NCBI RefSeq assembly: GCF_001194135.2 | Contig: NC_069000.1 | Location: forward strand, 44,627,175 to 44,691,174 | DNA from: Octopus bimaculoides | Taxonomy: Eukaryota | Length of the DNA stretch: 64,000 bases | Reading direction: 5' to 3' | Part shown: positions 8,041-52,029 of the stretch, one piece after another | Layout of the letters: each line of letters starts with the position of its first letter | Numbering within the stretch: the stretch's first letter is position 1 | The notes under the pieces: generated by a model | The model's database searches: none | The model's input: only the letters and a program-made list of their open reading frames with translations | Told to the model about the DNA's origin: nothing | Position numbers and translations under genes: made by a program

Positions 8041-10270
8041 NNNNNNNNNNNNNNNNNNNNNNNNNNNNNNNNNNNNNNNNNNNNNNNNNNNNNNNNNNNN
8101 NNNNNNNNNNNNNNNNNNNNNNNNNNNNNNNNNNNNNNNNNNNNNNNNNNNNNNNNNNNNNNNNNNNNNNNNNNNNNNNNNNNNNNNNNNNNNNNNNNNN
8201 NNNNNNNNNNNNNNNNNNNNNNNNNNNNNNNNNNNNNNNNNNNNNNNNNNNNNNNNNNNNNNNNNNNNNNNNNNNNNNNNNNNNNNNNNNNNNNNNNNNN
8301 NNNNNNNNNNNNNNNNNNNNNNNNNNNNNNNNNNNNNNNNNNNNNNNNNNNNNNNNNNNNNNNNNNNNNNNNNNNNNNNNNNNNNNNNNNNNNNNNNNNN
8401 NNNNNNNNNNNNNNNNNNNNNNNNNNNNNNNNNNNNNNNNNNNNNACCAAAGCATTTCTACAGATATCGAAACAGGAAAAAAACAAAAAAACAATCGAAA
8501 AACGAAATAAAAAAGAAAATGATATTTAAACAGGAATTAAACAGGAATTCCAGAAATAATTATGTTTGTTTCGCTATTTTTTTGCAATTTAAAGTAATTA
8601 ATCGATTGCTATGAAAAAAAAAAAAAAACTTTGGAATTGATTGGCTTCAAAGACAAGAAGGGACAACATGAAAGGAAAGGTATGATAAGGGGGGGGGGTT
8701 GAAAGAAAAACCCAAAAATAACACCTTGGTTTCCAAAAAAAAAAAAAAAAAATTATTTAAAATGTATGAAATGAAAGATGACAATGTGAACAGAAAGAAA
8801 GTTAATCGGCCTCTGTAATTATCATTTACAGATTGTTCTTCTGGTTGTTGCTGTTCGTTATGTTTCACATCAATTAGTAATAATGATCATTTACAAACAA
8901 ACTCAAGGCCTCACATTAATTAGTAGTGAAATAAATGGTTAAATTCTATCAAGCTTTGACTTCCTCAAGAAGTGGTATGAATGAAGAACACTCAGCAAGA
9001 TGCCGCCAAAACCCTAGTCGCAAATTTGGTTTCCAATTTGAGCTTCACCAGAGTATAACTTAGTATTCTTGGTGCTGTTTACTGCATGCTAGTTCCAAAA
9101 TAGTGATTCCTTATCAAACTGCAAAACCACCAAGTGTGAAATTGGACAAAATAAGTTGTTCCTTCTCCAGGAAGTTAAAAAAACAAAAAATGAAGTGTCT
9201 TGCCGAAGGTTGGTATTGTGACTTAATTTCTGCAGCAGGACAGGAACCTGAAGACCTGACAGAACAAATAAAGTGTTGTATTTATTGGGGGTGCCAATCT
9301 TGTACCTTTTCTTCCCAGCCAAGCTTTATCTGAAGGGGGCCAAGTATAATAATAAAAAAAAAAAGGGGTGGAGGTTAGAAAATATTACTTACAAAAGACA
9401 AATGATGGGAAAGAATATTAAATTTGTTTGCAGGGTGAGATGACAGGGTTAGCATCAGTGAGGTCACAATCCAAAGACGGGGAAGGAAATCGTAGTGAAA
9501 GGGTGGAAACAAACAAGGCATTCATAATACTGGTTTTTGGTATTAGATGGGACAGTCACTGTATAGGGCTATGATCTGGTGGTAAGGTTAGGGCACAGGG
9601 TTAGGGTCAGATGGTGAAATGAGGACATAGGTTCAGGGTCAGATGTTGAGGTCAAGACAGAAGGTTAAAGTGTAAGATCTGAGTCTAGATTTAAGAGCAA
9701 TGACAAAGCTGGATGCTCGTCTTAGGATGAAAGCAGAGACAAGGTTGTGGTGTAGATTTTGATCATGGGAGTGCTGCTTCTGAGGGAGACAGCACTGTCT
9801 TGAGTGGAAGGACACAGAATGAGAGAGAGAGAGAAAGGAGAGAGAGAGAAAGGAGAGAGAGAGAAAGGAGAGAGAGAGAAAGGAGAGAGAGAGAAAGGAG
9901 AGAGAGAGAAAGGAGAGAGAGAGAAAGGAGAGGGAGGAGTGAGTGAGGGTCATGTTTTCCGATGAAGAGAAAGAGAAGTTTTGTTTTTTTTTCAGTGTCA
10001 AAGAGTAGAGATATATTTCAAGGGAGAAAAACAATTCTGGAGGTGGACATATGCCTGATAGAAACCTGCTGGCTTTCATAAATACATATATTTTGCATTT
10101 ATATGTGATAGTTTGTTCTTTCTTTTGCCTGGTTTTTCTGGGTTTTTTTTTGTTCGTTTGTTAGTTTTGAGTGTAAAGTAGTAAGATGAAGTGAGAGTGA
10201 AAGTGAAAGTGGAGTGATAGTGGAGTTAAGTGTTGTTTCGAAAATGCATGTTGCGAAACAACAGAAAAAA

Positions 10271-11772
10271 TTAACTGACGGGGTTCGGAAATAAGTGGTA
10301 GTTCCTTTTTAATTTTTCACAGGTCTTGCATATCCACTGCTTCTGCTCATCAGCAAGTTTATTGGGGTCGTGATCTGGGATCAGCGAACCAGGAAATGGT
10401 GAAAATCGACTCAGTTGGTCTCTGGGCAATGGTCTTTCACACGAAATACACATATAGCCCAAACTCTGCTTAGAATACATTTGCATTCCAGCATCAGCAG
10501 ATTTTCCATAGTTAACAACAGAAGAAGAAAATGCAGAACTAGAAGACTCAACCTCTTTTTTCCGATGACCATGGTCAGTTTTTTTCCTAACATCTGGCAC
10601 CGATTTTAGATAAGAGCAGTTTCCATCGCGGTCAATATTACCGCCAGGGACCCCGTATGGATTCATGTAGGAGAAGTTTGACATTCGATTTTGCTCAGGG
10701 ATTATACAAGGGAAGTTTATATCTCTGTCATTGATGTTGCGACTTTGGTTTTGGTTGAAGAATGGATGGATCACACCACCAGCCTTATCGTTTGGGTCTT
10801 TGTTCTGTGACTGAACGCCATAAGGAAACATAGATGCCCTATCAGCTGAAGTGACTTCAGACTGATAGGGATTCAAGCAGAACGATCCAGCTGCCATTCC
10901 ACTGCCACCCCCTGGTGTTGTTGCTCCACCACCGCCACCACCACCAGTTGCTGCTGCTGCCGTTGCCACAGAGACATCCGCACCGCCCCCTGCACCAGTT
11001 ACTCCACGGTCGGCAGGGAGATTTTTGTTTTGTTCCTGATCCATGCAAGGGAAGACCGGGCCCTTGTCATGCGTGTCTTTGTTAGGGATCAACGTCATAC
11101 CTGGAAACACTGGTCCTCCTAAACCAGCCCTGTCCAGTTCGTTCTTGTCAGCAATCTGATCCATACACGGGAACACACTTCCCCTTTCAGGAACTATTTT
11201 GTTAACTTGATTTCGGCTCATAAACACATTGTCTCGATCCGACATTGTCTTGCCATGGTTTTCTGATGACATGTTCGACTTGGAGTAAAGGTAGTCCGAT
11301 TGCCTGTTCGTCACTGCCTTTTGGTTTGAGCCGACGTATGCAAAATCAGGAGACTGTTCCTCGTTAGGATTCGGTTTTGAGGTCTGCAGACGGTCGTCTT
11401 TATTTTTCATTTGCTCAACACAGTAACTGTCTGCATTTCCATCTGGGCTGCAGGTGTCTGTGTAGCGTAACAGAGAATCCTGTTCAGCCAAAGTTGACCC
11501 CTTACCACGTGGTTTCTGTCCTGTCTTCATCATTTGGACCATAAGGCGCTTTCTCTCCACACGCATCTTGGAATTCATTCGCATGCGTTCCAACCGTTTC
11601 TGACGTTCATCAGGTGACTCATTCTCTAAACGGCGCCGTTGGTACTGTCGCATCTGTTCCAGTCTTTTCTCACGAGGATTTATGCAGCCACCACTAAACT
11701 GGTTTCCATCAGATTTCGACCCCTGGTCACAGTTTGGTCCACACATCATGTTATTAGCACATTCATAACAAT
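10271..11772 (-). CDS. Terminal exon 3 of the STPR-repeat protein: two STPR-type repeats and a C-terminal CISC-x36-CKTC zinc finger
   Basis: 492-aa ORF extended upstream to the acceptor ...ctatttgcag|AT TGT TAT GAA (phase 1, in frame with ATG 11749). Repeats ...EKRLEQMRQYQRRRLEN and ESPDERQKRLERMRMNSKMRVER; Cys motif at 10319-10450; stop at 10271. Confidence 0.85.
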
Positions 11773-12559
11773 CTGCAAATAGATAAAATATATGAACATT
11801 TAATTACAATATAGACATAATTTAAAGTGTGTGTGTGTGTAGGAGGGAGTCTATATGCATTGATTTTCCAGTCTCTCAACCTCTCTCTGCCTCTATTCAC
11901 ACACTCTCTCTCTCTCTCTCTCTCATGTATGTGTGCGCATATCTCACGTATACATGTATAGTGGAAGACACTTGCCCCAGATGCCACGCAGAACCATGTG
12001 GTTGGTAAGCAAGCTACTTACCACACAGCCACAGACAGACAGACAGCTATATGTAGATACATGTCTGTGCGTATATATCATGTTTATTCTCCCCCCTCTC
12101 ACTTATACACACATACCACCCTCTTACATACTGGTTAACTGGTATGTATGTGCATTGAAATCAACTTTTATCTATGCGAACTCAGCTGAGAAAACGTAAA
12201 TATCGAGTTATGGTTACGCTCACAATTACCTTTATCTTTTGCTAACCTTTCAAAAATTTTAATGGTGATGTATAACTGTAGTAATAACATTTTGAATAAC
12301 ATATTTATATTTTACATAAAAATATCTATTATCATTTTGGTGGTAAATAATACAATTCGGATGACACACAAGCTTTTTTTTTTCCATAAAATTATTTTAC
12401 AGTAGTTGCATTCAAAACATAAGACATTGTAATATTTTTCTTTCCTATTAAGTTAAATAATAAAACATCAAACCTGTCAAATTTATTTACCTAAAACCCA
12501 TCAAATTCCTCATAATCATCAGTATCTGTTTCTAAAAGTTCCCTCATGCATATCACAAG

Positions 12560-12860
12560 ATTCATCACATATGGCATCATGGTAAGGATTCCAGTCTGGT
12601 TCTGGTGAATCGACTTCGACGTCGCTATTGTTCAGAATATCATCATTGGTACCATCCATGGCATTAGAGATACCGCATTTTAAAAATGATTCTTTTCTAC
12701 TTTAACTTTGTCCAATGCCTTTATAACAAAGAACACAGAGAACTTCAAGTGAGGCAGCACGATTAGCTCCACCTTTTGTAAAAGATCTTTCTCCATTCAG
12801 TCATTCCATTGCTCTCTCACATTATCTTTAAATGGTTCCTCTTGTGCTTCCTCTTCTCAT
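12560..12860 (-). mobile_element. pogo/Tigger-like transposase C-terminal relic in intron 2 of the STPR gene
   Basis: Manual translation FTKGGANRAASLEVLC...*...ESFLKCGISNAMDGTNDDIL matches the pogo C-terminal SFxKCGISNxxDGxEDD motif; interrupted by stops and frameshifts. Confidence 0.7.
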
Positions 12861-13200
12861 TGCACATTTTTGTTTGGGCATTTGTCTCAATTTTTCCTCA
12901 TCCTTTCTCTACTCACGGGTTGGACGGAGTTTATTGAGGCAGATTTTCAACAGCCAGGTGCCCTTTCCTGTTGCCAACCCTCACCTGTTTGTAGAATATT
13001 GGAAATGAATGATATTGCTTGCATGACACTGACAATCCTCTTACAACTACCACATGAAGTCAACACAAACATATGCACACCAACACACACACACACACAT
13101 ATACAGGATGGGCTTCTTTCAGTTTCCATCTACCAAGAGAGAAACATCATTACACAGTGGAAGAACTACAATAAATTCTTGATATCTTTATACTACTTAC

Positions 13201-14109
13201 CTTCATCAATAGAAGATATTGGTGGTGCGGAAAGACAATCGCATCCTTTTTTCCGCTTTTTGCAGTCTTGCGAGCATTTCATGTTAGCATAGCAGCCATC
13301 TTTCCCCATATTACAACTGTTCATGTAAGAATAATCGGACATACTGTTGGACATGGATTTGTTTTGATCTGAAGAGTAGCAGCCAAAACTGTTTCCATCT
13401 CCGTTTGTGGTCACACGGTTCTGAATCTGGTTGAAAGACGGGAAGACAACTTCTCCGGTTGAACCCCTGTCCATCACATCTTTATTGGTATTGAGTGGTT
13501 CCATACAAGAGTAAGAGCCAGTCGAAGTTCCGTTCGAGTGGCTTCTGCTCTGGCATTGTCTACCGTTCTCTTTCATGCAAGGAAAATCTCCGTTGCAACA
13601 TAAATTCTCTTGACGACACGACTTCCCACACGGGGCCGAGCAACAGGGGCTGTCTTGCATGCTGCTACAACTTTTGTCATTCTGACACATGTAGCCGCAA
13701 TCTTTATCCATGTTCTTGGAGCTTAATTTCATCGGGAAACTACCACCGTCCCGGTTAAGCATCGACTGGTATTGAAATATATTCTCGTTATCTTTCATCC
13801 GTCGCATCAGAATCGAAATCGCCTGCGACTTTTTTTTCCCTTTCTGAGAGTTTCCCAACAGTTGTGCTATGGCTTTTTTCCTCTCTTCGCGTCGCCTCGC
13901 GTTTTCTCGCATGCGTACCAGCCTTTTCTGTCGATGCTCGGGGGGCTCGGTTGCCATGCGCTGGTGCTGATACCGTTTCATGCGCAGCAGTCGCTTTGTG
14001 CGCTGTGTATCGGTCTCTGTATGAAGACGCCTTCGTTGCTTCAATCTCATTTTTAGTAATTTTCTGTCTTTTGGCGTCATCATCTCAGCTGTAGCGTTGT
14101 CATAGTAAT
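13201..14109 (-). CDS. Exon 2 of the STPR-repeat protein (909 nt, phase 1-1): two full and one partial 23-aa repeat
   Basis: Lies inside the 330-aa ORF. Acceptor ...ttgttttgtag|ATTACTATG and donor GAAG|GTAAGT. Repeats are ETDTQRTKRLLRMKRYQHQRMAT and EPPEHRQKRLVRMRENARRREER, followed by KKAIAQLLG, which is paralogous to RKAIAQILG in exon 1. The ORF's apparent N-terminus (MFSVVLF...) is the intronic pyrimidine tract. Confidence 0.82.
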
Positions 14110-17100
14110 CTACAAAACAAATGACACAACAGAAACAAACATTAAGAAAATATGTTAGAAGAATAAAAAGAACGACAGAAAACAATTCTTACTAATTTTA
14201 ACCCAAGGCTAGCAGTTCTGATGTGAAAGGGCAGGTTGATTACATCAACCCTAGTACATGACTGGTACTCAAGATCCCTAAAGGATGAAAGGCAAAACTT
14301 GACCTCAGAACTTAATGCCAAAAGAAATACTGTTAAGCATTTTGACCAGCATTCTAATGGTTCAACCATTCAACCGGCACACTACCTTAATAATAATAAT
14401 AATAATAATCCTTTCAACTGAAAGTAGAAGGCCTGAAATTTGGGGTAAGGAGACTAGTTGATTACACCGGCCCCAGTGTTTCACTGGTACTAAATTTATC
14501 AACCCCGAAAGGATGAAAGGGAAAGTCGACCTCAGTGGAATTTGAGCTCAGAACATGAAAACGGACAAGCATTTTGCTCAGCGTGCTAAGGATTCTGCCA
14601 GCTTACCACCTTAAATAATAATAATAATAGTTATAGGGTGTGATGGTAATGGCTGCAGTAGAACTGTGGTAGTGATGTTGGCTTTAGTGTAGTAGTGGTT
14701 GTAGTAGTGCTGTGATGGTGGTGTCGGTGACGGTAGTGTTAGGGAGGCTGGGAAAGGTTACTGTTGTTCCACCCACCCCTGTTTTATTTATTTATTTATT
14801 TATTTATTGCAAAAAGAATCTCTGGGCAGATGGGAAGGAGAGGAAGCGTGCAGAAGGAGGGGGAGGGAGAGGAAGCAATCAGGATGCAGTGGCAGTTAAT
14901 ATCTATGTTGCTTAGCAACAGATCAGTCACTCCACGCCATCACCACTCCAATATACACAACTACATCCCAATTCAGATATCACACACACACACACACACA
15001 CACAAGCAGGCATACACACACAGACAGCCAAACATGTAGATACATGCACACACACACACACACCTAAACATACACAAGATATTATCACCTCTGCAAGATA
15101 AGAAGCCGGTGGATTGAAAATACAGGCAGGAGAGAGAGAGAAAGAAAAGGGGTAGATGGAGAAAGAGATAGAGAAAGAGTGGGGGAGAGAGAGTGAGAGA
15201 GAGAGAGAGAGACAGAAAGGAGACTGGTAAGAGAAGTATGTATGGAAATACATCAATATGTATATGAATGCAAATGTGTGTAGATGAGCGTGTGTGTGTG
15301 TGTGTGTGTGTATGCGTGAGTATATATATATATATATATGTATGTATGTACATATATATATGTGTGTCTGCATGCGTAAATAAAAATATGTGTGTATATG
15401 TGTGTGTTTGTAAATGAATGTGTGTGTGTGTGTAGATGAATGTGTGTGTGTGTGTAGATGAATGTGTGTGTGTGTGTGTGTNNNNNNNNNNNNNNNNNNN
15501 NNNNNNNNNNNNNNNNNNNNNNNNNNNNNNNNNNNNNNNNNNNNNNNNNNNNNNNNNNNNNNNNNNNNNNNNNNNNNNNNNNNNNNNNNNNNNNNNNNNN
15601 NNNNNNNNNNNNNNNNNNNNNNNNNNNNNNNNNNNNNNNNNNNNNNNNNNNNNNNNNNNNNNNNNNNNNNNNNNNNNNNNNNNNNNNNNNNNNNNNNNNN
15701 NNNNNNNNNNNNNNNNNNNNNNNNNNNNNNNNNNNNNNNNNNNNNNNNNNNNNNNNNNNNNNNNNNNNNNNNNNNNNNNNNNNNNNNNNNNNNNNNNNNN
15801 NNNNNNNNNNNNNNNNNNNNNNNNNNNNNNNNNNNNNNNNNNNNNNNNNNNNNNNNNNNNNNNNNNNNNNNNNNNNNNNNNNNNNNNNNNNNNNNNNNNN
15901 NNNNNNNNNNNNNNNNNNNNNNNNNNNNNNNNNNNNNNNNNNNNNNNNNNNNNNNNNNNNNNNNNNNNNNNNNNNNNNNNNNNNNNNNNNNNNNNNNNNN
16001 NNNNNNNNNNNNNNNNNNNNNNNNNNNNNNNNNNNNNNNNNNNNNNNNNNNNNNNNNNNNNNNNNNNNNNNNNNNNNNNNNNNNNNNNNNNNNNNNNNNN
16101 NNNNNNNNNNNNNNNNNNNNNNNNNNNNNNNNNNNNNNNNNNNNNNNNNNNNNNNNNNNNNNNNNNNNNNNNNNNNNNNNNNNNNNNNNNNNNNNNNNNN
16201 NNNNNNNNNNNNNNNNNNNNNNNNNNNNNNNNNNNNNNNNNNNNNNNNNNNNNNNNNNNNNNNNNNNNNNNNNNNNNNNNNNNNNNNNNNNNNNNNNNNN
16301 NNNNNNNNNNNNNNNNNNNNNNNNNNNNNNNNNNACAAGGCTTTGGTCAGCCCAAAATTCCACGTAGCAGGGCTGAACCTGGAACCAAGTCATTGGGAAG
16401 CACACTTTTTACCACACAGCCACACCTTAATAATAATAATAATCCTCACCATTGTTGAATGTCCACTTTTCCATGCTTGCACAGGTCAGATGGAATTTAC
16501 TGAGGCAGATGTTCTAAGGGTGAATGCCCTTCCTGTCACCAACCCTCACCTGTTTCCCAAGCAAGGTAATATTTTCATGAGAAACTGCAAACAAACAACC
16601 TCGCATGTATGATGGTGATGCTCATTTACAACCATCATGTAAGAGTATGCGCAAATGCATGTATGTGCACATGTGCGCTTTTTACATGTCGGTTATGTGG
16701 TGTCACGTAAAAGGCACCTTTCGAGCATTGAGCCTCACAGTGTCAAAGTGGCCGATGCCAGTGGCACATGAAAAGCTCCTTTCGAGTGTCGGGCCTCACA
16801 GAAGCAATAAAAAATGACCGAGACCTTGGCAGATACTGGTGTCATGCAAATGGCACCCATGCCAGTGGCACGTATAAGCACTCATTACACTCTCAGAGTG
16901 GTTGGCGTTAGGAAGGGCATCCAGCCATAGAAACCATGCCAAATCAGGAGTTTGGTGCAGCCTTCCAGCTTACCAGCCCTGATCAAACTGTCCAACCCAC
17001 GCCAACATGGACAATGGATGTTAAATGACGATGATGATGATGATGATATATATACATATATATATAAACACAAGTGTGTTTTAAAATTTACGACAGCTGT

Positions 17101-17384
17101 TTAGATAGAATTTTTGGTAAAATCTTAAACAGGTGAGATAATACCATGAAGGCAAATCCAATCTGTGTTGGATAGATTCATCATCATCATCAAGATATTA
17201 TCTCACTTGTTTATAACTTTATCTGAAGATGGTAGATTATACGTTATGACATAATCTATGAATACATCTATAAAATTCTACTGAAACAGCTGTTGGAAAT
17301 TTTTAAACCTATTTATGCTCCTTTTTTTTTTGTGCCTATGTTGCACCTAGAACTAGTCCAAAGTCAGATCTACAGCTTAAATAA

Positions 17385-17595
17385 GGCAGCGAGCTAGCAG
17401 AAACGTTAGCACACCGGGCGAAATGCTTAGCGGTATTTTGTCTGTCTTTAGGTTCTGAGTTCAAATTCCTCAGAGGTTGACGTTAGCTTTCATCCTTTCA
17501 GGGTCAATAAATTAAGTACCAGTTGCGTACTGGATCAATCTAATCGGCTGGTCCCCTTCCCAAAAATTTCGGGCCTTGTGCCTAGAGTAGAAAAG
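17385..17595 (+). mobile_element. Abundant ~200-bp tRNA-related SINE family (representative copy)
   Basis: ggcagcgagctagcagaaacgttagc...gagttcaaattc...catcctttcaggggtcaataaattaagtaccagt...ttgtgcctagagtagaaa; many copies elsewhere (6.2-8.0, 14.2-14.6, 33.7-34.4, 47.7, 53.8, 54.3-54.8, 56.7, 59.8-60.1 kb). Confidence 0.75.
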
Positions 17596-20500
17596 ATCTA
17601 CAGCTTAAACTGGATTTGGTATTTACATATCCACAATATCCCACAAACACCTGATACCTTCATGCTTGTTTTTACCTCACTGTGAACCTGATGGTATTGC
17701 ACCTAGCCATTTGTGGCGTCCTACATCTTGATGTACCTGGATTCTATTGAATCCTATAGCTAATCTATATGTGTGTGTGTGTTGTTAATATGCTTCTATA
17801 ATGCAAAACATAACCACTTATTTAGGACTGCATATGCCCTATAACATTCCAATACATACACCCAGTAAATATATTCGTGTTAAAATACACCTGAACACAT
17901 AATGTAGGTGTGCAGGCTGTAATAATAAAGATGATTGATTTAATGACTTTAATCTATTTTCCAAATAAAGGATCTTTAATTTCACACATCAAAAGCAAAA
18001 AGACTGCTCACGTCATGAAAGTGCACACACACACATATATGCAAACAAACGGATGCACACATACACACACAATATATATGTAATTTTGGGGACTAATGGG
18101 TATAAGTGAATTAATGTTGAGTAAAGCACTTTCACAGTATGGGGCTACCTGGTGTCATCCATGGTTGGAGTATATTTTTCTGCTGGATTTACATCAGGAA
18201 TTCTGCAGTGTTGGTTGAGGTAATAATAATCGATGAAGGAAACAGAGGATAGATTTGGTATTAGACTTTATTCAGTACGACAATTGTTTCGACCCATCCT
18301 GCAACTGTCCATTATGGGTACGATTTTGTGCATGAATCTCCACAGTTTGTGGAGATGCATAATCATCATCATCATTTAACATCTGCCTTCCATGCAGGCA
18401 TAAATGATATATATACATACATACATATATATAAGGAGAGAGAGAGAGATGGTGCCATATAAAAAGCACCAAGTACACTCTGTAAAGTGGTTGAAATTAG
18501 GAAGGGCATCCAGTCATAGAAACCCTGCTGAAGCACAATTGGAGCCTGGTGCAGCTCTCTTGCTGGCCAGCTCCTGAAACCATCCAACCCATGCCAGCAT
18601 GGAAAGCAGAAGTTAAATGATGATGATGATGATACACGTACATACTTACAGATATATAAAAATCTGCCCCAATGAATGCTGTCTGCAAGCATGAAAAAGT
18701 GGATGTTATAAATGATGATGATGGTATTCATATCATCATCCTCTTTACGTCTGTTGTCCCCATGCTTGCATGGGTCGGACAAGTACTGTCCAGTACATCA
18801 TACTCCCATCACTTGCAGTATTCCTTTGTCATAATTTAACCCCTTAACTCTTAACATAAAGCCACCACTCTTAGGGTGTATAGCCTTGCAAGTTGTGCGA
18901 CTACCTCACTAGTGCCTGCAGCACATAAAACAAAACACCCAGTACACTCTGTAAAGTGGCTGATGTTAGGAAGGGCATTCAGCTGTAGAAACCATGCCAA
19001 AGCAGACCAGACATTGATGTAGTCTTTGGCCCAAGCAAATCCTGTCAGATCATCCAGCCTATAACATTGTGGAACATGGACATTAATCCTTTATAATACT
19101 TTATTAATCCATATTGTTTCAAACTAACCATGGCCCTATCTCATAAATTCGAGATTCCAATGATGTAACTGTTTATATTTAAAGTAACAGTGCGGGGTAG
19201 GTGTGAGAGGCCAGATCTGGCCAATTTAATCATAAAATGGAACAAACATCTGAGCCAGACATGGCTTGTTTAAACGTTGTTCCCTCGAACTGGCACAGGT
19301 CATTAGAGTGTTGAGTAGAATGCCTTGTGGTATTTCTTCCAGCTCCCACTCTGTGCTCTGAGTTCAAATCTGCTTTTCATCCTTTTGGGGTTGATAAAAA
19401 ACAAGTCTCAGGTGAGAGTGATCGACTGTTAGAATTATCAGAGCATCAGATGGGATACCTTGTCATTGCAGTTCCAGCTTTATGTCTTGTGAGTTCAAAT
19501 CCCACCCTGAGACTGAGAAATAGTGACATCTTCTGACAGAAGTTGCGAATAAAAGATAGTGCATCCATCCTCATTTATCACAGAAGTTTGGTTCCAAAAA
19601 CACTGATAAAAGAATCATCTCCATGCGTTTTGTAAATGGAATGAATAATAAATTCACATATTTTTATTGATCATCTCTACATTTTCCTGTACACTTGTTT
19701 GTGTATTTTTGCTAGGATTAAGTGCCTTCATACAAATGAATGGTAGAATCACCAGCACAAACTTCGTGGCTCAGAGCAGCAAAGTTTCTACCATCATCTA
19801 ATTATTTTCATCATCTCTACCTTCTCCCATATCAAATATATTCCTCGGTTAGAATCAGGACGCCTTGGTATTTTCTCGGTTCACAGGTCTCATGTTGATG
19901 GGTGTGAGTATATAAATCCATATAATAAAAATCCACAGCCTCATACCCGGTCATGTGAGTACAAGTGATGGTCAGTGCATTTTGGAGAGCTGAACCTCAT
20001 GGGTGGTCACTGGAGAATTGCTTTTGTGGCACAAACAGAACATTGGACTGATCACCAACCTGTGTTATCACAATTCAGTCCATGATAAGCGTAACACAAT
20101 CCACAAGTGAGCATACTGTTTCACCACCGATCAGTGTTGAATGAATCAGTGATAACCAATGCTTGCATATATCTTCTATCTTTTACTTGTTTCAGTCATT
20201 AGACTGCGGCCATGCTGGGGCATTGCCTCGGAGAATTTTTGGCAAACAAGTTGATCCTAGTACTTACTTTTCTTTTTAGCCTCCAATCTTCTATGGAAAA
20301 TATGTCTGGCCATGGGGGAATATTACCTTACTTGGAAACATGTACAGTTGGGGACAGAAAGGTCATCCAGCTGCCTCAACAAATTCAAGCCAACCCATGC
20401 AAGCATGGAAAAGTGAACATTACAATAATGATGATGCACACATATAGTTTAAAGGTGTGTGGCTATGTGATTAAGGTGTTTGCTTCCCAATTGTGTGGTT

Positions 20501-21883
20501 GTAGGTTCAATCCCACTGAGTGGCACCTAAGGTAGGCCTAGGTATTTTGTCTTTTTATTCTTTTACATGAGTCAGTCATTTGACTGTGGCCATGCTGGAG
20601 CATCGTATTTAGTCAAATAAATCAACCCCAGGACTTATTCTTCGTAAGCCTAAAACTTATTATGTCGATCGCTTTTGCCGAACTGCTAAGTTACGGGGAC
20701 GTAAACACACCAACATCGGTTGTCAAGCGATGGTGGGAGACAAACACAGACACACAAACATATACATACATACAATGGGCTTCTTTCAGTTTCCATTTAC
20801 CAAATCAACTCACAAGGCTTTGGTCAGCTCGGGGCTATAGTAGAAGACACTTGCTGAAGGTGCCACACTGAGGGACTGAACCCAGAACCATGGGAGGCAA
20901 GCAACCTACCACACCTGCACCTATGTTTAGAAATATGTCTGTGTGCTTGTTTAAATTTGCACCGCTCTCAAATTTGCTCAGCAACACGCAGTGATGTTAT
21001 TGTCATTTCCCCATATCAATGGATCACCTGCTAACTTTGTAATCTTGAAGATGTGTGGAAATAAGATGTCTAGCATTTGTAAAACACTGGTGAGGGTTAG
21101 CAACAGGATGGGCATTCAGCTGTCAAAAACTTGCCACAATAATATATTCATCAAACTCATGCTGGCATGGAAAACAGACATAAAATGAACCAACAAAATA
21201 TACGTTTGAGAATGTCTATATACACACACATACGTGTGTGTATACATACATATATATATATTTTTTCTTTTATTTGTTTCAGTCACTTAACTGCGGCCAT
21301 GCTGGAGCACCACCTTTAGTTGAACAAATTGACCCTAGGACTTATTCTTTGCAATCCTAATACTTACTCTTTTAGTCTTTTTTGCCGAACCGCTTAGTTA
21401 CAGGGTCGTAAACACATTAACATCGGTTGTCAAGACACACAAACATATACATATGATGGGTTTTCAGTTTCCATCTACCAAATCCAATCACAAGACTTTG
21501 GACAGCCCGGGGACTGAACCTGGAACCATGTGGTTGGGAAGCAAGCTTTTTACCACACAGCCACACTTATAATGTTAATGTTTGTTTTTACGCTCAGTTA
21601 TTATAAAAGCAATTTTACATTAATCAGATGGGTTACTCTACATATATGTGGGTGTGTGTATATATATATATTTGTATATATACATATGCATATATTTGTA
21701 TATTTATATACACACATATGTATATATGCATAGACATATATATGTTTATACACATGAACACAGATGTACATTATATGTATAGCAATATATATATATATAT
21801 ACATGTACATACATACATACTATATAAGCATTAACATAATGAGCTGTAAACATTATCCTATCATTACAATTTGAATTACTCAC

Positions 21884-23798
21884 CTTGACTAATGAGTGGC
21901 GAAAATGAAGACCCCAACATGTATTCAAGCTTCCTCTCTAGGGTCCCTACATCTTCTAATTGCCCAAAGTCAGCTCCTGTTTCGCCCGGACTGAATGTGG
22001 ATTTTTTCTTCTTGCGCTTCATTGCTTTCGGTGTAAATGAACAGGATGAATTACCAGTCTTCTGTTGACCACCAATGTCCAGTAATGTCAAATTGTTACT
22101 TTGGTCGCTCTGGCCAGCTTTCGCCGCCGTTCCTTTGCTCGATGGATCAAGTGAACTTTGAATGGCATCCAGGTTTAACAGATCTTCACTTCGAGGAGTC
22201 ATTATCTCAGTTCGTACACAGTCAACTTGGGTTGGCTTATAGTTAGGCTTGAGATAAGGAAAAGCCCCATCTCTATCAGAGAGGCCCAAACCTTGAGCTG
22301 CACTAATATAAGAAAATCCACCATCTCTTTCATTCGTTCCAGTTTTACCATTCTCTTCACTGATATTACTTTGGGGTGATGTCAGGCAATCAAAGCCCAT
22401 TTCTTTATCAGTCATGTCTTTATTTTGGTTAGAATGCAAGTGAGAAAATATTCCAGAAGTATCTGCTTTATCTGCCATACCCTGTTTGTTGAGGCCATCC
22501 TTTTCCATAGTTGAGTCCATACAAGGTAAAACAGCCCCACCAGCCGATCCGCGCTCCATCCCAGGTTTGTGTCCACCTTGCTGGTTCCTATTCTGGCACT
22601 GACTGTTGTTCTCTTTCATGTAAGAGTATTCTCCATTGGAATTTTTCTGACTTGAATCTAGATAAGACAAATCTCCTTGCCTGTTGTTCTTGTCACATTG
22701 GTTGGTGAACCCTGATCCATCCTGGGTATTACAAACATTTTTATCATTTTGACTTAAATAGCTGAAATCATCTTGTCTATCATTTGGGTCTTTCTGGCCT
22801 TGTTGCTCCATGGATGGAAATCCTTGATTACGACCTGATATATTCTTTGAGTTCATTCTCATGAAAGACAGGTTGTCGCCGGCTTGTCTCATCAGTAATT
22901 CAGCAGTTGAGGTCTTTTTCCGCCCCCTCTTACAAGAAGATCCCAATATCTGTGCTATAGCTTTTCTCCTTTCGACGCGCATTCGCGCATTTTCTTTCAT
23001 ACGTATCAGTCTTTTGTGTCTACCATCTGCGTCTTCGGTCTGCATTCGATTCCGTTGGTTTTTTTGAAGTCTCTGCAAGCGCCTCGATCGATCAGGCTCA
23101 CTTTCGATATCAATCCGTCGATGTTGATTTATCCTTAACCGCATCAACCTAGCTTCCCTCTCCGCTAAAGTTTCTCGGGCACGTTTAGCCCGTTCGTAAG
23201 CTTTCATCTGCTCCAGCCGCATCTGTTTGTCTTCCAGTGACATATTAGCGTAACGTTTCCTCTGATATTCTCTCTTTCGGATCTTTTTTTCGCTTCTTTT
23301 CTCGTCGTCAACTGAAAACGATCGAGATTGTCTATCGATCCGGCAGTTACCGATCTGATGATCAGAATAGCAGCCATAGCTATAGTTGCCATCACAAAAA
23401 ATCTCGGAAGTGGTGTTACAGTCTAAACATCCGTTTGAAGAATTGAGAAAAACATCCGGATCGCTGTCATACAAGCTTTCGAAGTTACTGAGGTCAGTTC
23501 GGTCGCAGACCTTCCGCGTTTTCGTAGTCTTAGCATGTATTTTACATTCGATGTAGTTGTTTGTGGGCTTTATGTTCTGTTCGGAGAGAGGGAAATACCA
23601 TAAGAGGATTTTACCGTTGTGGGTCACACAAAAGTTCTTGCTATCGTAGATAGTTCGACTAAGGATGTCACAGAGCGTCTGGTGAGGTTGAAAATCGAGA
23701 GTAAAATCACGTCCTGAATCGATTCTGAAGCAAATCTTCATTGCTGCTCCACTACTCGCTTGTCCTTTCGACATATCACTATAGTTGCAATCAGACAT
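21884..23798 (-). CDS. Exon 1 (coding) of a UBL + STPR-repeat + zinc-finger protein: ubiquitin-like domain (~23529-23741) and four 23-aa STPR-type repeats (22968-23243)
   Basis: 640-aa ORF with normal coding composition. MKICFRIDSGRDFTLDFQPHQTL...THNGKILL...LSEQNIKP aligns by eye to ubiquitin. Repeats MSLEDKQMRLEQMKAYERAKRAR / ETLAEREARLMRLRINQHRRIDI / ESEPDRSRRLQRLQKNQRNRMQT / EDADGRHKRLIRMKENARMRVER are each exactly 23 aa. The ORF ends across a donor CAAG|GTGAGT (phase 1, last exon base 21884). Confidence 0.85.
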
Positions 23799-26800: not shown

Positions 26801-29800
26801 GTCACAACTTACAGCCTCCGGTGCAAATCATCATGATACAAGTAACTCTTTTCCAATATTCAGATGGCTTCCAGACCATCATTTCAGCTCTCTTTTTTTC
26901 TCCACTACAACTTTAATCTTTATATTCTCCAACACTGTTAACATCAAGCTGTTCCTGAAAAAAGAAGACAAAAAAGAACAAATTTAACCCAGACACCCAG
27001 CATGTATAATATATATACACATAAAAGCACCTTTTGAGTGTTGGGTCTCACGGCAATAGCAAATGACTGAGGCCCTTGGCATTATGTTGTGCTTGAAAGG
27101 CAGCGAGCTGGCAGAAACATTAGTACGAGTTCAAATTTTGCCAAGGTCGACTTTGCCTTTCATTCTTTTGGGGTCAATAAATTAAGTACCAGTTGCATAC
27201 TGGGTCGAACTAATTGATCTCCCCCAAAATTTCAGGCCTTGTGCCTAAAGTAGAAAAGATCATGTTATGCTTGAGAAGAAGACTCAACAACATTATTGCA
27301 CATCTCTTAAATATAGAACTGTAAGACCCATCTTGCCAAGTAAAATTGCAATCATGGCAGATACTGGTGTCACACAAATGGCACGTAAAAGCACCCATTA
27401 CACTCTCAGAGTGGTTGGTGTTAGGAAGGGGCATCCAGCCATAGAAAGCCATACCAAATCAGACTGGAGTCTGATGCAGCTTGCTAGCCCTGGTCAAACC
27501 ATCCAACCCATGCCAGCTTGGACAACGGGTATTAAATGACGATATATATGTACATGTGGGTTTGATGGTACGAATAGGGTTGATAGAACTCGAAACATCA
27601 TCACCACCATTTAACATGTGTTTTCTGTGCTTGCAAGGGTTGGACATGTCAACAGGAGGTGGTGAGACACAGGAGCTGTACCAAGCATCACTGTCTGGTA
27701 AAGTTTCAACAGCTGGGTGCCCTTCCTTGTGTCCAACTTGGTGAGGGTCGGTGACAGAAGGGCGTCCTGCCATAAAAATCTGTCTGACCCGCACAGAGAT
27801 GGGGAAGTGTCTTCTACTACAGCCTTGGACTGACCAAAGCCTTGTGAGTGGATTTGGTAGACGGAAACTGAAAGAAGCCCATCATATATATATATATACA
27901 TATGGCAAATGAAAGACGAAAGATGGAATATACGAGAATGTATTAGTAATCACAATTGTTTCGACACATCTAGCATCGATCTCCCATGGATGGGACTCGC
28001 AACGACTGGTTCAGGAGCATCTGGCAGTATCTCGTCAGGTGATACAGGTGTAAACCAGTCATTTTATTATCCATTATATATATCAACTGCAACAGCACTG
28101 CAGACCATGCCCACAGAGGGCACCCCCGAGTGACCGCGCCCAGGCAGGACTGTTTCATCCACCTGCAACACCTCCATGATCGCTTCAGACCAGCCAGCAT
28201 GACAGCTCACGAGACCATTGGCACAGGACAGTAGTGACCCATCAGTGACGACACGGTACAACATTGACTGGCCACCAACAACCTGCATTGAGGTCATCCT
28301 GCCCGAGAGTCTGTGGCGTGACATCACCCATATTTATACACACACACACATACAGATCTGTATATAATCAAAAGCCAAAATAGTGTTTAAAATATTTACT
28401 TCATCATTTCAAACAAGTTCATCATTTATTCAATCCAATTGATTTTTCTTAAATATGGAAGCATGTACGCACAATAATTTGGTCATCAGTAAACTTGCTT
28501 TAAGAGTTTCAGTTTTATGTGATAAGTTCAAGCTGTCTCCATAAGTTTTTTTTTTAATGTTTTTGTTTGTTTCGCTTTCCTTTTTTTTTTTTCCTTTTTT
28601 TTTTTTTNNNNNNNNNNTTTTTTTTTTCCTTTTTTTTTTTTGTTCTGCTTTTCATGCTAGACATTTTTGTAAACAAGGCAAATCTTTGTTCAATCAATAT
28701 TTGTATCACCCATCACCTTTTGTGATCAACACAGACAAGAAGCCTTAGACTAACCATATACATTATATATGTACATATATACACACACATACATGTATAT
28801 ATACAGTACATTTTATATATATATACAGTAAAGATATACATACACATGTATATGAATAAACATTATATATATGATGTATATATTTATATATATGCACACA
28901 AACATATATATATACATATATGTATGTGCGTGTGTGTGTATATATATATATATATATAATAAAATTCATATTGTCTGGGACTTTCACCTGACCAGTTATG
29001 TAAATCATTGAATATATGCTCAGGTAAAACCTAAATTGAATTTTATAAATTTCGCTCTATTTTCAATGTTGAGCCCCACTACACCCTCCTGTATAAATAT
29101 TCCATTTTTATGCTTAAACTTACTTCAAAACAGTAACCTCTATTCTAATATATGTACATGCATGTATATATATAAAATAATATAATAATAATAATATATA
29201 TATATGAATGTGTATTTATGCTTGAGTGTAAGGTCTTCTCTGTTCCATGTTTGCTTGTTTTTATTATTAAACTTAACAAAAAGGTTTTTTTAAGTCTTTC
29301 TACAGGACATTTTTTTTTTAATTTATCTATTCCCCACCAAAAAAAAAAAAAAAAAAGGAAGAAAAGTATTTCTCTCTTTCTTTCTCTAACATAGAGAAAA
29401 AAAAAGATCTTTTAAAAAGTGAGAGAAAAATGGTAAAAGAAAAATAGCCAAAGTCTTGCTCTACTGAAATCCACAATTGTGGATTTTTACTTATTGACTT
29501 GGCAAAAATCGGAAAGAAAAAAAAAGACATTTTCGCTTTTGCTGCTACCCAAGAATTTGAATATTTGGTAAGGTAAGGAAGAGTGTAAAGAATTTCAGAT
29601 TCAGAGATGATACCTGTGGCTAAGATGGAGAATCTCCTGGTTTTCCCCAGGAGTGAATGTAATGGACGTCACACACATGTAGCTAGTTTGATTTTAATGA
29701 AGGAAAAAAGTTTGTGAGAAAGTTATTTGACATAAAATATCTGGTTGAAGTTCAGTTCAAGTCAGGAAAGTTTGTTCACCATTTCAACAGAAAAGAAACC

Positions 29801-30123: not shown

Positions 30124-30873
30124 TTAAAATACTGTGAGAAGGGCAAATACTCCGTAGACTAGAGCACATGGATAGGCAACAAGGAGCTGCTGGTGATCCA
30201 TTGCTAGGGCAGAGACAAACAGCTTTGAGGCCGAGAAACTACACCAGAAAACTGCCATGACAGTTAGGAATATACCAAGGGCTCCCTTCAAAGAGATCAT
30301 GACAGATACAGACGATAGGATAACCATTGGTAATAGACAATAGCCTAATACACTTATTGTACATCCAGACGAAACACCAGTGATACTCATCAAGTTTAAC
30401 AGACCATACATGGCAAGGCATCCTACAACCCCGATACCATAGATGTAACCAAAGTGCAGTTTGCCAGACAGCATCAAAGCAGCACCGAAAGCAATGCAGA
30501 ATACTAAAGGTCCAGCCAGATCAGTGTCCTTCATTATGTTGTGGTCAGCATCTTGTAACGGGTTCAATACGGCCATTGTCTTTTGTGTGATGTGGTCAAA
30601 GTTAATGCCCAATTCTTCCATTAGTGGTGGCTCATCCTCAAAACTGTCTGGTGCTGTAGTCTGGTAGACAGTCGGTTCCGGTGTCATAATAGAACCAAAA
30701 TATGGATCTTGACTGTTGGTCGTGATGTATTCTGTAGTGGTGGTCTGGCTGTAGACAAACTGACCGAACTGAGGTTCCTGGCCAAAGCCTTGAGTGTCCA
30801 TGTTATATCCAGAACTTTGGTTTTCATAGTAGTTGGATGAGTAAAATTCTCCTTCTTGGCCGAAAGAAGACAT
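30124..30873 (-). CDS. YIPF5: Yip1 domain family member 5/7 (Yip1A), ER-Golgi trafficking membrane protein; CDS has no introns
   Basis: 249-aa ORF with the hallmark segments [41 protein letters not shown] and [18 protein letters not shown]. Splice acceptor ctctcttctttccag| lies 22 nt upstream of the ATG (exon starts at 30895). Confidence 0.95.
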
Positions 30874-30975
30874 TTTGGAACGATTTTGAGAATATCTGGA
30901 AAGAAGAGAGAAAATAAAAATTATTGAAAATGTTTGGAAAACAGATGAAAATTATGCAACAATAAACAAATTCTT

Positions 30976-31179
30976 TTAACCCTTTTGATATGAACCCAAC
31001 TGAGACTGCCTCTTGTTCTATGATGTAAGCTTTCTGTTTTAAAATAATTTTCCAGCATAATTACATGCTAATTTATTTTCCAAGCACCAGCTTAATAATG
31101 ACAAATTTATTTTACAAAATTCTTCATTATTTTCAAAATTTATTGAAACAAGGAGAACATGTGGCAACAAAAGGGTTAA
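30976..31179. mobile_element. piggyBac-type MITE (TTAA-flanked)
   Basis: TTAA-CCCTTTTG ... CAAAAGGG-TTAA; related sequence at ~47935-48160 and ~4880. Confidence 0.6.
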
Positions 31180-48222: not shown

Positions 48223-48735
48223 CTTTATAATTACATCTCAGTCCATAATAATTCTTTGCACAACCATCAATACAGTAGCCATTGTAAGGATAGCAGCTTC
48301 CATGGAGGCAGTGACCACATTTCTGACAGATTTTACCATGTTTGTAATATCCAGCTTGGCAACCAGTATAACCAAGTCCATCACCGTAACTGTGACCAAG
48401 ATAATATTGAGGAGCATAACCTTGACCATGACCATGACCATAACCATGATGGTGGCCATAACCTAATCGGCGACCATGACCAAATCGGCGACCATGACCA
48501 AATCGGCGACCATGACCAAATCGGCGACCATGACCAAATCGGCGACCATGACCAAATCGGCGACCATGACCAAATCGGCGACCATGACCAAATCGGCGAC
48601 CATGACCAAATCGGGGGCCATAACCATGATGACGACGATAACCATGATGACGACGATATGGACGACCGTATCGAATTCCATGGTGATAACCGTGGCCATA
48701 ATGTGGTGAGTTACCATAACCATATCCATAAGAAG
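48223..48735 (-). CDS. Exon J (513 nt): 8 x (FGHGRR) repeat, Gly/His/Tyr-rich spacer and an 8-Cys EGF-like module
   Basis: tttgcag|CT TCT TAT GGA...; 18-nt repeat x8 at 48469-48612; ends GCQAGYYKHGKICQKCGHCLHGSCYPYNGYCIDGCAKNYYGLRCNYK G|GTAGGT. This frame is absent from the ORF track. Confidence 0.85.
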
Positions 48736-51195: not shown

Positions 51196-51257
51196 GTACA
51201 TTTTCTCAAACAATAAAGCAACAAAAATACTAATAACTCAGAGTGTTAGTAATTTAC

Positions 51258-51881: not shown

Positions 51882-52029
51882 CTGTAAATAATTGCAAACA
51901 AATTAATTAGATTTCATTAACAAAAACACTGTCATTTCTTTACTACATAGCCATATATATATGTGTGTGTGTTATATTATGCTTGTATACATAGACATAT
52001 TTAATCTATTATTATCATTGTCATTATCA

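What the first reader, a model, noticed from the sequence alone, without database searches (positions are those of the whole stretch)
10271..23798. Three separate-looking ORFs splice into one ~1441-aa UBL / triple-STPR / zinc-finger protein
Seen: the ORFs at 21876-23798, 13193-14185 and 10271-11749 have consensus GT-AG junctions, all phase 1 and frame-compatible (1915+909+1502 = 4326 nt, 1441 aa plus stop). Each exon has its own block of exact 23-aa basic helical repeats (ExxxxRxxRLxRMxxxxxxR). Established: the STPR (score-and-three-peptide repeat) domain is a DNA-binding module described in Bombyx FMBP-1 and human ZNF821, where it occurs as a single block. Inference: three STPR blocks plus an N-terminal ubiquitin-like domain and a C-terminal C4 finger would be a multivalent DNA-binding nuclear factor with an architecture I do not recognise.
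Basis: partly seen in the sequence, partly recalled or inferred. Interest (0 to 1): 0.85.

Follow-up and report, generated by a model that had tools for sequence, protein, structure and literature searches.

The report
Octopus three-exon triple-STPR DNA-binding gene
The three reading frames do splice into one 1441-residue octopus protein with three separate arrays of the STPR DNA-binding repeat, but this exact gene model is already in RefSeq and UniProt as an uncharacterised protein, so the finding is correct and only moderately new.

Summary
Three minus-strand ORFs join through consensus GT-AG, phase-1 junctions (21884|14109 and 13201|11772) into a 4326-nt CDS. Its 1441-aa product is identical to Octopus bimaculoides RefSeq XP_014771913.1 (LOC106870383; UniProt 'STPR domain-containing protein').

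O. sinensis and O. vulgaris have collinear 1443-aa orthologues. O. sinensis has the same three exons and identical splice sites. dN/dS is 0.13, exons are 93-96% identical and introns 83-86%. A contig from a more distant octopod-like species joins the exon-1 end to the exon-3 start at exactly these boundaries.

The N gap lies inside intron 1 and hides no exon.

Each of the three STPR blocks (5+3+2 repeats, strict 23-residue register) passes Pfam's cut-off on its own.

The three exons are paralogous modules: an STPR array plus a disordered tail carrying a reiterated F[PS][YC][ML] motif.

The C-terminal CxxC...CxxC element is invariant across three lineages but matches no family. The N-terminal 'ubiquitin-like' domain is not demonstrated.

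An exhaustive search found no full-length relative outside octopods.

Most likely this is a cephalopod-restricted, multivalent nuclear DNA-binding factor built by exon-module duplication.

The parts
21884..23798 (-). Coding exon 1 (1915 nt; residues 1-638 plus the first base of codon 639). ATG at 23798-23796, donor CAAG|GTGAGT after 21884.
   Evidence: 95.9% identical to O. sinensis exon 1, dN/dS 0.11
23535..23741 (-). N-terminal residues 20-88: possible beta-grasp (ubiquitin-like) domain, not demonstrated.
   Evidence: dN/dS 0.05 for residues 1-162
22968..23312 (-). STPR block 1: five 23-residue repeats (residues 163-277; the first is degenerate).
   Evidence: Pfam PF21107 at 34.6 bits, E 2.6e-8; PDB 5d23 FMBP-1 at E 0.0019; register
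14110..21883 (-). Intron 1 (phase 1). It contains the assembly gap 15482-16334, flanked by TG/GA microsatellites. True length unknown.
   Evidence: 83.5% identity to O. sinensis over the alignable parts, where the intron is 14,989 nt
13201..14109 (-). Coding exon 2 (909 nt, symmetric phase 1-1; residues 639-942 in part): module 2.
   Evidence: same length and identical splice sites in O. sinensis; dN/dS 0.15
13880..14086 (-). STPR block 2: three 23-residue repeats (residues 647-715).
   Evidence: Pfam PF21107 at 33.5 bits, E 5.6e-8
11773..13200 (-). Intron 2 (phase 1).
   Evidence: 86.2% identity to O. sinensis
10271..11772 (-). Coding exon 3 (1502 nt including the stop at 10271-10273): module 3 plus the C-terminal finger.
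   Evidence: dN/dS 0.12
11552..11689 (-). STPR block 3: two 23-residue repeats (residues 970-1015).
   Evidence: Pfam PF21107 at 30.9 bits, E 3.6e-7
10307..10456 (-). C-terminal CxxC-x36-CxxC element (residues 1381-1430; C1383, C1386, C1423, C1426).
   Evidence: YMCxSCERPLPxD...WICKTCEKL is invariant in Octopus, P0033/L006 and P0005/P0031; no non-synonymous change in 71 codons against O. sinensis; no family above threshold

Best explanation
This is one three-exon, single-copy host gene of Octopus bimaculoides (LOC106870383). It encodes a 1441-residue nuclear protein. Shown: the gene model, its conservation under purifying selection, and the three STPR arrays (5, 3 and 2 repeats of 23 residues). 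These arrays keep the phosphate-contacting positions of the solved FMBP-1 STPR-DNA complex (R6, R9, L10, R20). Shown: the protein is three paralogous modules, one per exon. Each is an STPR array followed by a basic cluster and a 200-350-residue low-complexity tail studded with a reiterated [FY][PS][YC][ML] motif. An Octopus-only N-terminal domain and a strongly conserved C-terminal four-cysteine element cap the protein. All introns are phase 1 and exon 2 is symmetric, so the modules most likely multiplied by tandem exon duplication. Inferred: each repeat forms a helix lying in the DNA major groove and covering about 4 bp, as in FMBP-1, so the arrays could cover about 20, 12 and 8 bp. Because long flexible linkers separate the arrays, the protein could hold two or three separate DNA sites at once, acting as a bridging or clustering architectural factor or transcription factor. 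The repeated tail motifs would serve as multivalent docking sites for a partner. The thymine-methyl pocket of FMBP-1 (S14, A17) is replaced by R/K and Q, so the sequence preference need not be the AT-rich one of FMBP-1.
For: Gene model: consensus junctions and frame. The product is identical to XP_014771913.1 and is encoded at GCA_001194135.2 CM046620.1. O. sinensis and O. vulgaris have 1443-aa orthologues, 95% identical end to end and collinear across both junctions. The O. sinensis model has the same three exons, and the splice-site sequences of the two species are the same. dN/dS is 0.13 overall and 0.05-0.17 in every part; exons are 93-96% identical, introns 83-86% with large indels. Contig L006 from another species reads ...ATTCAACAAG|ATTGCTGTGAG..., which is the exon-1 end abutting the exon-3 start at the same boundaries. 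It aligns as one HSP (E 1e-113) to the exon-2-skipped protein. STPR: PF21107 at E 4.6e-18 for the whole protein, with each block above the cut-off on its own; FMBP-1 structure 5d23 at E 0.0019; register and contact residues checked against PMC4856987. Modules: the exons hit each other at 29-34% identity over 230-270 residues, E 1e-12 to 1e-39. Motif: 13 copies against 0.45 expected, and also enriched in P0005 and L006. Nuclear: basic clusters KRGRKK, KRKKKK and KKRKK lie outside the arrays.
Against: I saw no transcript from O. bimaculoides itself. Inclusion of exon 2 rests on computed gene models in three species, conservation and splice-site identity. The only transcript-like contig (L006) lacks exon 2. 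There is no experimental DNA-binding data for any cephalopod STPR protein. Y16 is kept in only 4 of 10 repeats, S14 in none and A17 in 2. Two of the three arrays are shorter than the usual four repeats. The functions of the linker motif, the N-terminal domain and the C4 element are entirely inferred.
Confidence: 0.75

Rival explanations
1. Exon 2 is a cassette exon. The gene would make both a three-array (1441-aa) and a two-array (1138-aa) isoform, so splicing would tune the number of DNA-binding arrays. This refines the best explanation rather than excluding it.
For: Exon 2 is 909 nt and phase 1-1, so skipping keeps the frame. L006 from a related species joins the exon-1 end directly to the exon-3 start at the conserved boundaries.
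Against: The L006 species may simply lack exon 2 in its genome. RefSeq lists a single product in the two Octopus species it covers, and the O. vulgaris annotation gives the same full-length product. Exon 2 is under purifying selection (dN/dS 0.15).
Confidence: 0.3
2. The basic 23-residue repeats do not bind double-stranded DNA here. They would act instead as RNA-binding, nucleolar or coiled-coil-like arginine-rich helices, and the STPR match would reflect only shared composition and periodicity.
For: The blocks are 23% Arg and 10% Lys. The base-contacting pocket residues of FMBP-1 (S14, A17, L21) are mostly replaced. Per-block Pfam scores are only 4-8 bits above the cut-off.
Against: The strict 23-residue register holds, with E1, R6, R9, L10, M13 and R20 at the FMBP-1 positions. 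FMBP-1 is the top PDB hit. All non-Octopus HMMER hits align on STPR arrays.
Confidence: 0.12
3. The three ORFs are three independent genes, or exon 2 and/or exon 3 are separate transcription units.
For: Exon 2 and exon 3 each contain an in-frame ATG near their start (MMTPKD..., MMCGPN...).
Against: Consensus acceptors preceded by in-frame stops are conserved in both species. The phases are compatible. Three independent annotations give the joined product. L006 carries exon-1-like and exon-3-like sequence on one molecule, joined at the predicted sites.
Confidence: 0.03
4. The locus is a transposon-derived or repeat-derived sequence rather than a host gene. STPR-like arrays also occur in proteins that look transposon-related.
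For: Some distant HMMER hits carry long STPR arrays next to sequence that I recall as Helitron-like (P0007; my own recollection, not tested).
Against: There is a single locus in the window and in the O. sinensis locus. The flanks are collinear between species. Purifying selection acts along the whole length. Pfam finds no transposase, helicase or RT domain.
Confidence: 0.03

Closest known systems
Bombyx mori FMBP-1 (fibroin-modulator-binding protein 1; PDB 5d23/5d2q/5d2s), the founding STPR protein
   Same: 23-residue basic repeats with E1, R6, R9, L10, M13 and R20 in the same positions. It is the top solved-structure hit (E 0.0019) and shares Pfam family PF21107. The expected mode is the same: one helix per repeat in the major groove, about 4 bp each (PMC4856987).
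   Different: FMBP-1 has 218 residues with a single block of four repeats at the C-terminus. The octopus protein has 1441 residues with three blocks (5, 3, 2) separated by linkers of about 370 and 250 residues, plus an extra N-terminal domain and a C4 element. The S14/A17 thymine-methyl pocket is replaced by R/K and Q. It is not an orthologue.
Human ZNF821 and its vertebrate orthologues
   Same: They contain an STPR domain combined with zinc-binding modules (PMC4856987).
   Different: From my own knowledge, not tested here, ZNF821 has C2H2 fingers N-terminal to one STPR block. The octopus protein has no C2H2 match in Pfam. Its zinc-type element is a C-terminal CxxC...CxxC of unassigned family. 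It is not an orthologue.
Single-module relatives from unidentified, probably cephalopod, species: P0005/P0029-P0032 (434-436 aa, Logan contigs; P0031, ENA contig ERZ21867824) and P0033/L006 (SRR27666065)
   Same: Same module grammar: a three- or two-repeat STPR array, then a tail with FSYL/FPCMDQ motifs, then the same YMCxSCERPLPxD...WICKTCEKL finger. A phase-1 AG acceptor sits at the homologous position.
   Different: P0005 shows one module per ORF and is probably only the terminal exon of a larger gene. No exon-1-like sequence lies within 10 kb upstream in L005. L006 has two modules (the module-1 tail joined to module 3) and no module 2.
Long single-array STPR proteins of insects and other animals (e.g. 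Blattella germanica PSN42408.1 = P0013; Drosophila CG14442)
   Same: Many STPR repeats in one protein (PMC4856987).
   Different: Their repeats form one uninterrupted array. In the octopus protein the repeats are split into three arrays on three exons, with long disordered linkers between them.

Membership tests
STPR domain (Pfam PF21107) | Profile match above Pfam's gathering score | tested here: met
   Whole protein 65.8 bits, E 4.6e-18. Blocks scored alone reach 34.6, 33.5 and 30.9 bits against a cut-off of 27.
STPR domain (Pfam PF21107) | Tandem repeats of exactly 23 residues | tested here: met
   Ten repeats are in an unbroken 23-residue register within the blocks (163-277, 647-715, 970-1015). 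[quoted passage not shown]
STPR domain (Pfam PF21107) | Conserved Glu1, Thr/Ser2 and Arg9 in each repeat (PMC4856987) | tested here: met
   E1 in 7/10, S/T2 in 5/10, R9 in 8/10 (R/K in 10/10). Most repeats comply; the first repeat of each block is degenerate.
STPR domain (Pfam PF21107) | Phosphate-contacting residues Arg6, Leu10, Tyr16 and Arg20 | tested here: inconclusive
   R/K6 in 10/10, L10 in 9/10 and R/K20 in 10/10, but Y16 in only 4/10 (N in 5/10).
STPR domain (Pfam PF21107) | Hydrophobic pocket Met13/Ser14/Ala17/Leu21 for thymine methyl groups (AT-rich preference) | tested here: not met
   M/L13 in 9/10, but S14 in 0/10 (R/K in 9/10), A17 in 2/10 (Q in 6/10) and L21 in 2/10. This argues against the same DNA sequence preference, not against family membership.
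STPR domain (Pfam PF21107) | Binds double-stranded DNA in the major groove | not testable with these tools
   Needs EMSA, SELEX, DAP-seq or a structure.
Ubiquitin-like (beta-grasp) domain | Match to a ubiquitin-family profile | tested here: not met
   Pfam gives no family at E<=10 for residues 1-162. PDB phmmer gives only E 1.2 and 1.5 to two ubiquitin variants.
Ubiquitin-like (beta-grasp) domain | Beta-grasp fold (beta-beta-alpha-beta-beta-(3-10)-beta) | tested here: inconclusive
   The AlphaFold2 model has mean pLDDT 39.2. Its element order E21-25, E31-35, H42-52, E56-60, E63-68, H72-75, E82-90 fits a beta-grasp, but the model is unreliable. Foldseek PDB has no hit at E<=0.001; ubiquitin is rank 22 at E 6.9. 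Only three near-identical sequences were available for the alignment.
Zinc finger, C4 type (treble clef or zinc ribbon) | Four metal-ligand cysteines in two CxxC pairs, conserved among relatives | tested here: met
   C1383, C1386, C1423 and C1426 and their flanks are invariant in four sequences from three lineages. dN = 0 over 71 codons.
Zinc finger, C4 type (treble clef or zinc ribbon) | Assignment to a named zinc-finger family or fold | tested here: inconclusive
   Pfam gives only sub-threshold Zf_2nd_IFT121 (E 0.014) and HNH_5 (E 0.075). AlphaFold2 pLDDT is about 75 only around the two knuckles: a hairpin at the first pair and a helix starting at the second. The Foldseek top hits are nearly all zinc-binding domains (LIM, RING, ZZ, PHD, ClpX ZBD, PacI HNH), but every one has E>1. 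No H-N-H residues are conserved between lineages, so it is not an HNH nuclease.
ZNF821 orthologue | C2H2 zinc fingers N-terminal to a single STPR block | tested here: not met
   No zf-C2H2 hit at E<=10, and there are three STPR blocks.

The most novel reading that the evidence does not exclude
This could be a cephalopod-restricted architectural chromatin factor. Three STPR arrays sit on separate, duplicated, phase-1 exons. Joined by long linkers carrying 13 or more copies of a conserved F[PS][YC][ML] docking motif, they would let one molecule bridge two or three distant DNA sites and recruit a multivalent partner. Skipping of the symmetric exon 2 would tune the number of arrays. That would be a DNA-binding valency set by exon-module number, a design not described for STPR proteins.
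Probability: 0.15. Interest if true: 0.6.

Novelty: new variant of a known kind. Interest (0 to 1): 0.35.

Why it matters
STPR is one of the least studied animal DNA-binding domains. Only FMBP-1 has a structure and a known target, and human ZNF821 is barely characterised. A protein with three separate arrays is a natural test of how array length and number set affinity, site length and bridging. It also shows how new multivalent DNA binders arise by duplicating a whole exon-encoded module. The gene appears confined to cephalopods, a group noted for lineage-specific expansions of regulatory genes. Its practical importance is limited until expression and binding data exist, and the gene itself is already annotated.

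Tried and rejected
1. Word-indexed protein search with the full 1441-aa query returned only the O. sinensis cluster. It missed P0005 and P0033, which later searches found, so I did not treat it as exhaustive.

2. The same tool with the N-terminal 163 aa returned '2 candidates, none scored', even though P0001 is 96% identical there. That is uninformative. The negative for the N-terminal domain rests on the exhaustive HMMER run, where every non-Octopus best stretch lies in an STPR block.

3. AlphaFold2 on the N-terminal 185 residues gave pLDDT 39, and on the C-terminal 120 residues pLDDT 53. Both models gave only non-significant Foldseek PDB matches. The alignments were too shallow.

4. P0004/L003 looked like possible transcript evidence. 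It is collinear with genomic DNA through the exon-1 donor into the intron, so it is genomic or unspliced and says nothing about splicing.

5. I looked for an exon-1-like module within 10 kb upstream of the single-module relative in L005 and found none. The contig extends further, but I could not fetch that part.

6. Literature searches for the locus and accession names, and for the run accessions (to identify the source species), found nothing.

7. HNH nuclease reading of the C4 element: rejected, because no His/Asn between the cysteine pairs is conserved across lineages.

8. A fourth hidden module in the gap or elsewhere: rejected, because tblastn of the whole protein finds only the three exons in the window and in the gap-free O. 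sinensis locus.


Full report
**Observation**

I read the four junctions directly.
- Exon 1 ends ...AGTCAAG|GTGAGT at 21884.
- Exon 2 begins ...ttttgtAG|ATTACTATG at 14109 and ends ...GATGAAG|GTAAGT at 13201.
- Exon 3 begins ...atttgcAG|ATTGTTATG at 11772.

Joining 1915+909+1502 nt gives 4326 nt, 1441 codons and a single terminal stop. Both introns are phase 1.

**The assembly gap**

The gap 15482-16334 lies entirely within intron 1 (14110-21883), next to (TG)n and (GA)n microsatellites. No reading frame crosses it. Only the intron length is uncertain.

**What the locus is**

The spliced product is, residue for residue, a protein already on record: XP_014771913.1, 'uncharacterized protein LOC106870383 [Octopus bimaculoides]'. 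UniProt lists it as A0A0L8IEM2, 'STPR domain-containing protein'. It is encoded on GCA_001194135.2 CM046620.1.

O. sinensis (XP_029647615.2) and O. vulgaris (CAI9737178.1) have 1443-aa orthologues. These are 95% identical from the first to the last residue and collinear across both junctions (...PLISQ|DYYDN......SSIDE|DCYEC...). No paper in the searchable library mentions any of these accessions.

**Independent support for the gene model**

- I fetched the O. sinensis locus (L001, no N). The only exon set that reproduces its protein is 10001-11921, 26911-27819 and 30536-32037. That is three exons, with exons 2 and 3 the same lengths as here.
- Donor and acceptor sequences are the same in both species, and in-frame stops lie just upstream of both acceptors.
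- Exons are 95.9, 93.0 and 95.0% identical, with length differences only in multiples of three. Introns are 83.5 and 86.2% identical over the parts that align and differ by kilobases (7.8 against 15.0 kb; 1.4 against 2.7 kb).
- dN/dS is 0.13 overall and 0.05-0.17 in every segment, including the low-complexity tails.
- The sequences flanking the gap align in order to the O. sinensis intron. tblastn with the whole protein finds nothing but the three exons in either locus. The gap therefore hides no exon.

**Transcript-type evidence from a relative**

Contig L006 (2452 nt, run SRR27666065, species unknown) is clearly an orthologue; its C-terminus is QWICKTCEKLKRNYHLFPNPVS. It reads ...ATGATTCAACAAG|ATTGCTGTGAGCAA.... 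That is the exon-1 end (O. bimaculoides ...ATTAGTCAAG) abutting the exon-3 start (ATTGTTATGAATGT...) at exactly the predicted boundaries.

Its product aligns as one segment (E 1e-113) to the O. bimaculoides protein with exon 2 removed. This shows the exon-1 donor and the exon-3 acceptor joined on one molecule. It also raises the possibility that the symmetric exon 2 is skipped, or is absent in that species.

L006 has a one-base frame change near nt 1035, which I take to be an assembly error.

I saw no transcript from Octopus itself. Contig L003 (P0004) is collinear with genomic DNA into intron 1 and says nothing about splicing.

**STPR arrays**

Pfam finds one family, PF21107 STPRs (E 4.6e-18). 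Scored separately, the three blocks reach 34.6, 33.5 and 30.9 bits against a gathering score of 27. The best solved-structure hit is FMBP-1 (5d23, E 0.0019).

In register, the blocks hold 5, 3 and 2 repeats of exactly 23 residues (163-277, 647-715, 970-1015). The table compares them with the residues that contact DNA in the FMBP-1 complex (PMC4856987: R6, R9, L10, Y16 and R20 to phosphates; M13, S14, A17 and L21 to thymine methyls; E1, T/S2 and R9 stabilise the helix).

| Position | Kept in (of 10 repeats) |
|---|---|
| E1 | 7 |
| R/K6 | 10 |
| R/K9 | 10 |
| L10 | 9 |
| M/L13 | 9 |
| R/K20 | 10 |
| Y16 | 4 |
| S14 | 0 (R/K in 9) |
| A17 | 2 (Q in 6) |

Membership of the STPR family is therefore sound. 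The AT-rich specificity of FMBP-1 should not be assumed.

**The three exons are copies of one module**

The exon products hit each other at 29-34% identity over 230-270 residues (E 1e-12 to 1e-39). The similarity runs beyond the STPR array into a shared AIAQ(I/L)LG-basic-cluster segment and the tail.

The tails are rich in S, G, N, D and Q. They carry a reiterated motif [FY][PS][YCSG][MLI] (FSYL, FPYL, FPCM...). It is usually preceded by D/E-R/K-D/G-x-x and followed by ...Q/N-N-K-D/N. There are 13 copies against 0.45 expected by shuffling.

The same motif is enriched in the relatives P0005 (6 copies) and L006 (10 copies). It is the most distinctive unexplained feature of the protein.

With all introns in phase 1, tandem duplication of an exon-encoded module is the simplest origin.

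**Relatives elsewhere**

An exhaustive HMMER scan of 1.84 billion representatives with residues 1-1200 gave only 25 hits at E<=0.001 and only two below 1e-10: the Octopus cluster itself and P0005.
- P0005 and its cluster (434-436 aa on short Logan contigs; 512 aa on an ENA contig) are a single module. It has three STPR repeats, an FSYL/FPCMDQ tail and the same C-terminal finger.
- The DNA shows a phase-1 AG acceptor at the position homologous to the exon-2 and exon-3 acceptors. This ORF is therefore probably the last exon of a larger gene.
- I found no exon-1-like sequence within 10 kb upstream.
- All other hits are generic STPR arrays. In the ones I read, the repeats form a single uninterrupted array.
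- No hit outside Octopus covers the N-terminal 160 residues.

**N-terminal 'ubiquitin-like' domain: not demonstrated**

- Pfam finds nothing at E<=10.
- The AlphaFold2 model has mean pLDDT 39.
- Foldseek finds nothing significant.

Hints in favour: two ubiquitin variants appear among the eight PDB sequence hits, at E 1.2-1.5 and aligned from the first Met. The order of elements in the poor model is that of a beta-grasp. The segment is the most constrained part by dN/dS after the C-terminus (0.05). I put the chance of a beta-grasp at about one half.

**C-terminal finger**

YMCxSCERPLPxD-(24-29 residues)-WICKTCEKL is invariant in four sequences from three lineages. It has no amino-acid change between O. 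bimaculoides and O. sinensis.

The model is moderately confident only at the two CxxC knuckles: a hairpin at the first, then a helix beginning at the second. That is the treble-clef pattern. The Foldseek top hits are nearly all zinc-binding domains, but every one has E>1. Pfam hits are sub-threshold. It is a credible zinc site of unassigned family and not an HNH nuclease.

**Mechanism**

The steps that are shown are the gene structure, the conservation, STPR membership, the modular paralogy and the motif reiteration.

The rest is inferred. Each repeat would fold on DNA into a helix in the major groove covering about 4 bp, as in FMBP-1. Three arrays on flexible linkers would give multivalent or bridging binding. 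The basic clusters (KRGRKK, KRKKKK, KKRKK) would target the protein to the nucleus. The tail motifs would dock a partner.

**Comparison and novelty**

The protein is a member of the STPR family. It is not an orthologue of FMBP-1 (218 aa, one block of four repeats) or of ZNF821 (C2H2 fingers plus one block; no C2H2 match here).

PMC4856987 reports STPR domains of three to seven repeats fused to various other domains, but not several separated arrays. The architecture is thus a new variant of a known kind. It is present in databases only as an uncharacterised prediction and appears confined to cephalopods.

The biology is interesting but not surprising, and its functional claims remain untested.

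Noticed in passing
window 30124-30873 (-): An uninterrupted 249-aa ORF with a Pfam Yip1 domain (PF04893, E 5.8e-10). It is a YIPF-like gene or retrocopy in a single exon, about 6 kb upstream of the STPR gene on the same strand.
   Followed up: partly
window 51238-51897 (-); also 48256-48789: A 219-aa ORF rich in His, Gly and Tyr ((HGHR)n, GYGYG runs) ending in a Cys-rich segment (CDAGYYRYGKICRKCGHCLHGYCYPYSGYCTGGCQLSYYGPRCD), with no Pfam match. The antisense translation of a second repetitive ORF at 48.3-48.8 kb suggests a similar neighbour.
   Followed up: no
window 59022-59483 (-): A fragment with the reverse-transcriptase zinc-binding domain (zf-RVT, PF13966, E 2e-5), cut by the N gap 59043-59252. 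It is a retroelement remnant.
   Followed up: partly
L006 (Logan SRR27666065_28272), nt ~533-545 and ~1035: An orthologous contig from an unidentified octopod-like species joins the exon-1-like end directly to the exon-3-like start, so exon 2 is skipped or absent. It has a one-base frame change in the tail.
   Followed up: partly
L004 nt 107-1417; L005 10001-11539: A single-module relative (three STPR repeats, motif-rich tail, same C4 finger) in another unidentified species. A phase-1 AG acceptor (ccttAG|ATCTAAATGAATAT) sits at the position homologous to the octopus exon acceptors, so it is probably a terminal exon rather than a whole gene.
   Followed up: partly
window 23343-23507, about 13520-13700 and 11660-13320 (-) (residues 98-152, 775-835, 904-980): Cysteine-rich stretches, e.g. 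GCLDCNTTSEIFCDGNYSYGCYSDHQIGNC, and CYANMKCSQDCKKRKKGCDC...DCYECANNMMCGPNC spanning the exon 2/3 junction. They have no family assignment and could be further metal sites.
   Followed up: no
window 9823-9936 and 15130-15481: A (GAGAGAGAGAGAAAG)n array just downstream of the stop codon, and TG/GA microsatellites abutting the assembly gap. The microsatellites are the likely cause of the gap.
   Followed up: no
L001 21455-26362 (O. sinensis intron 1): About 4.9 kb is present in O. sinensis but has no counterpart in the O. bimaculoides window between 14630 and 14635. Several other intron segments match repeats dispersed in the locus, so intron size differences come from repeat insertions or deletions.
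   Followed up: no
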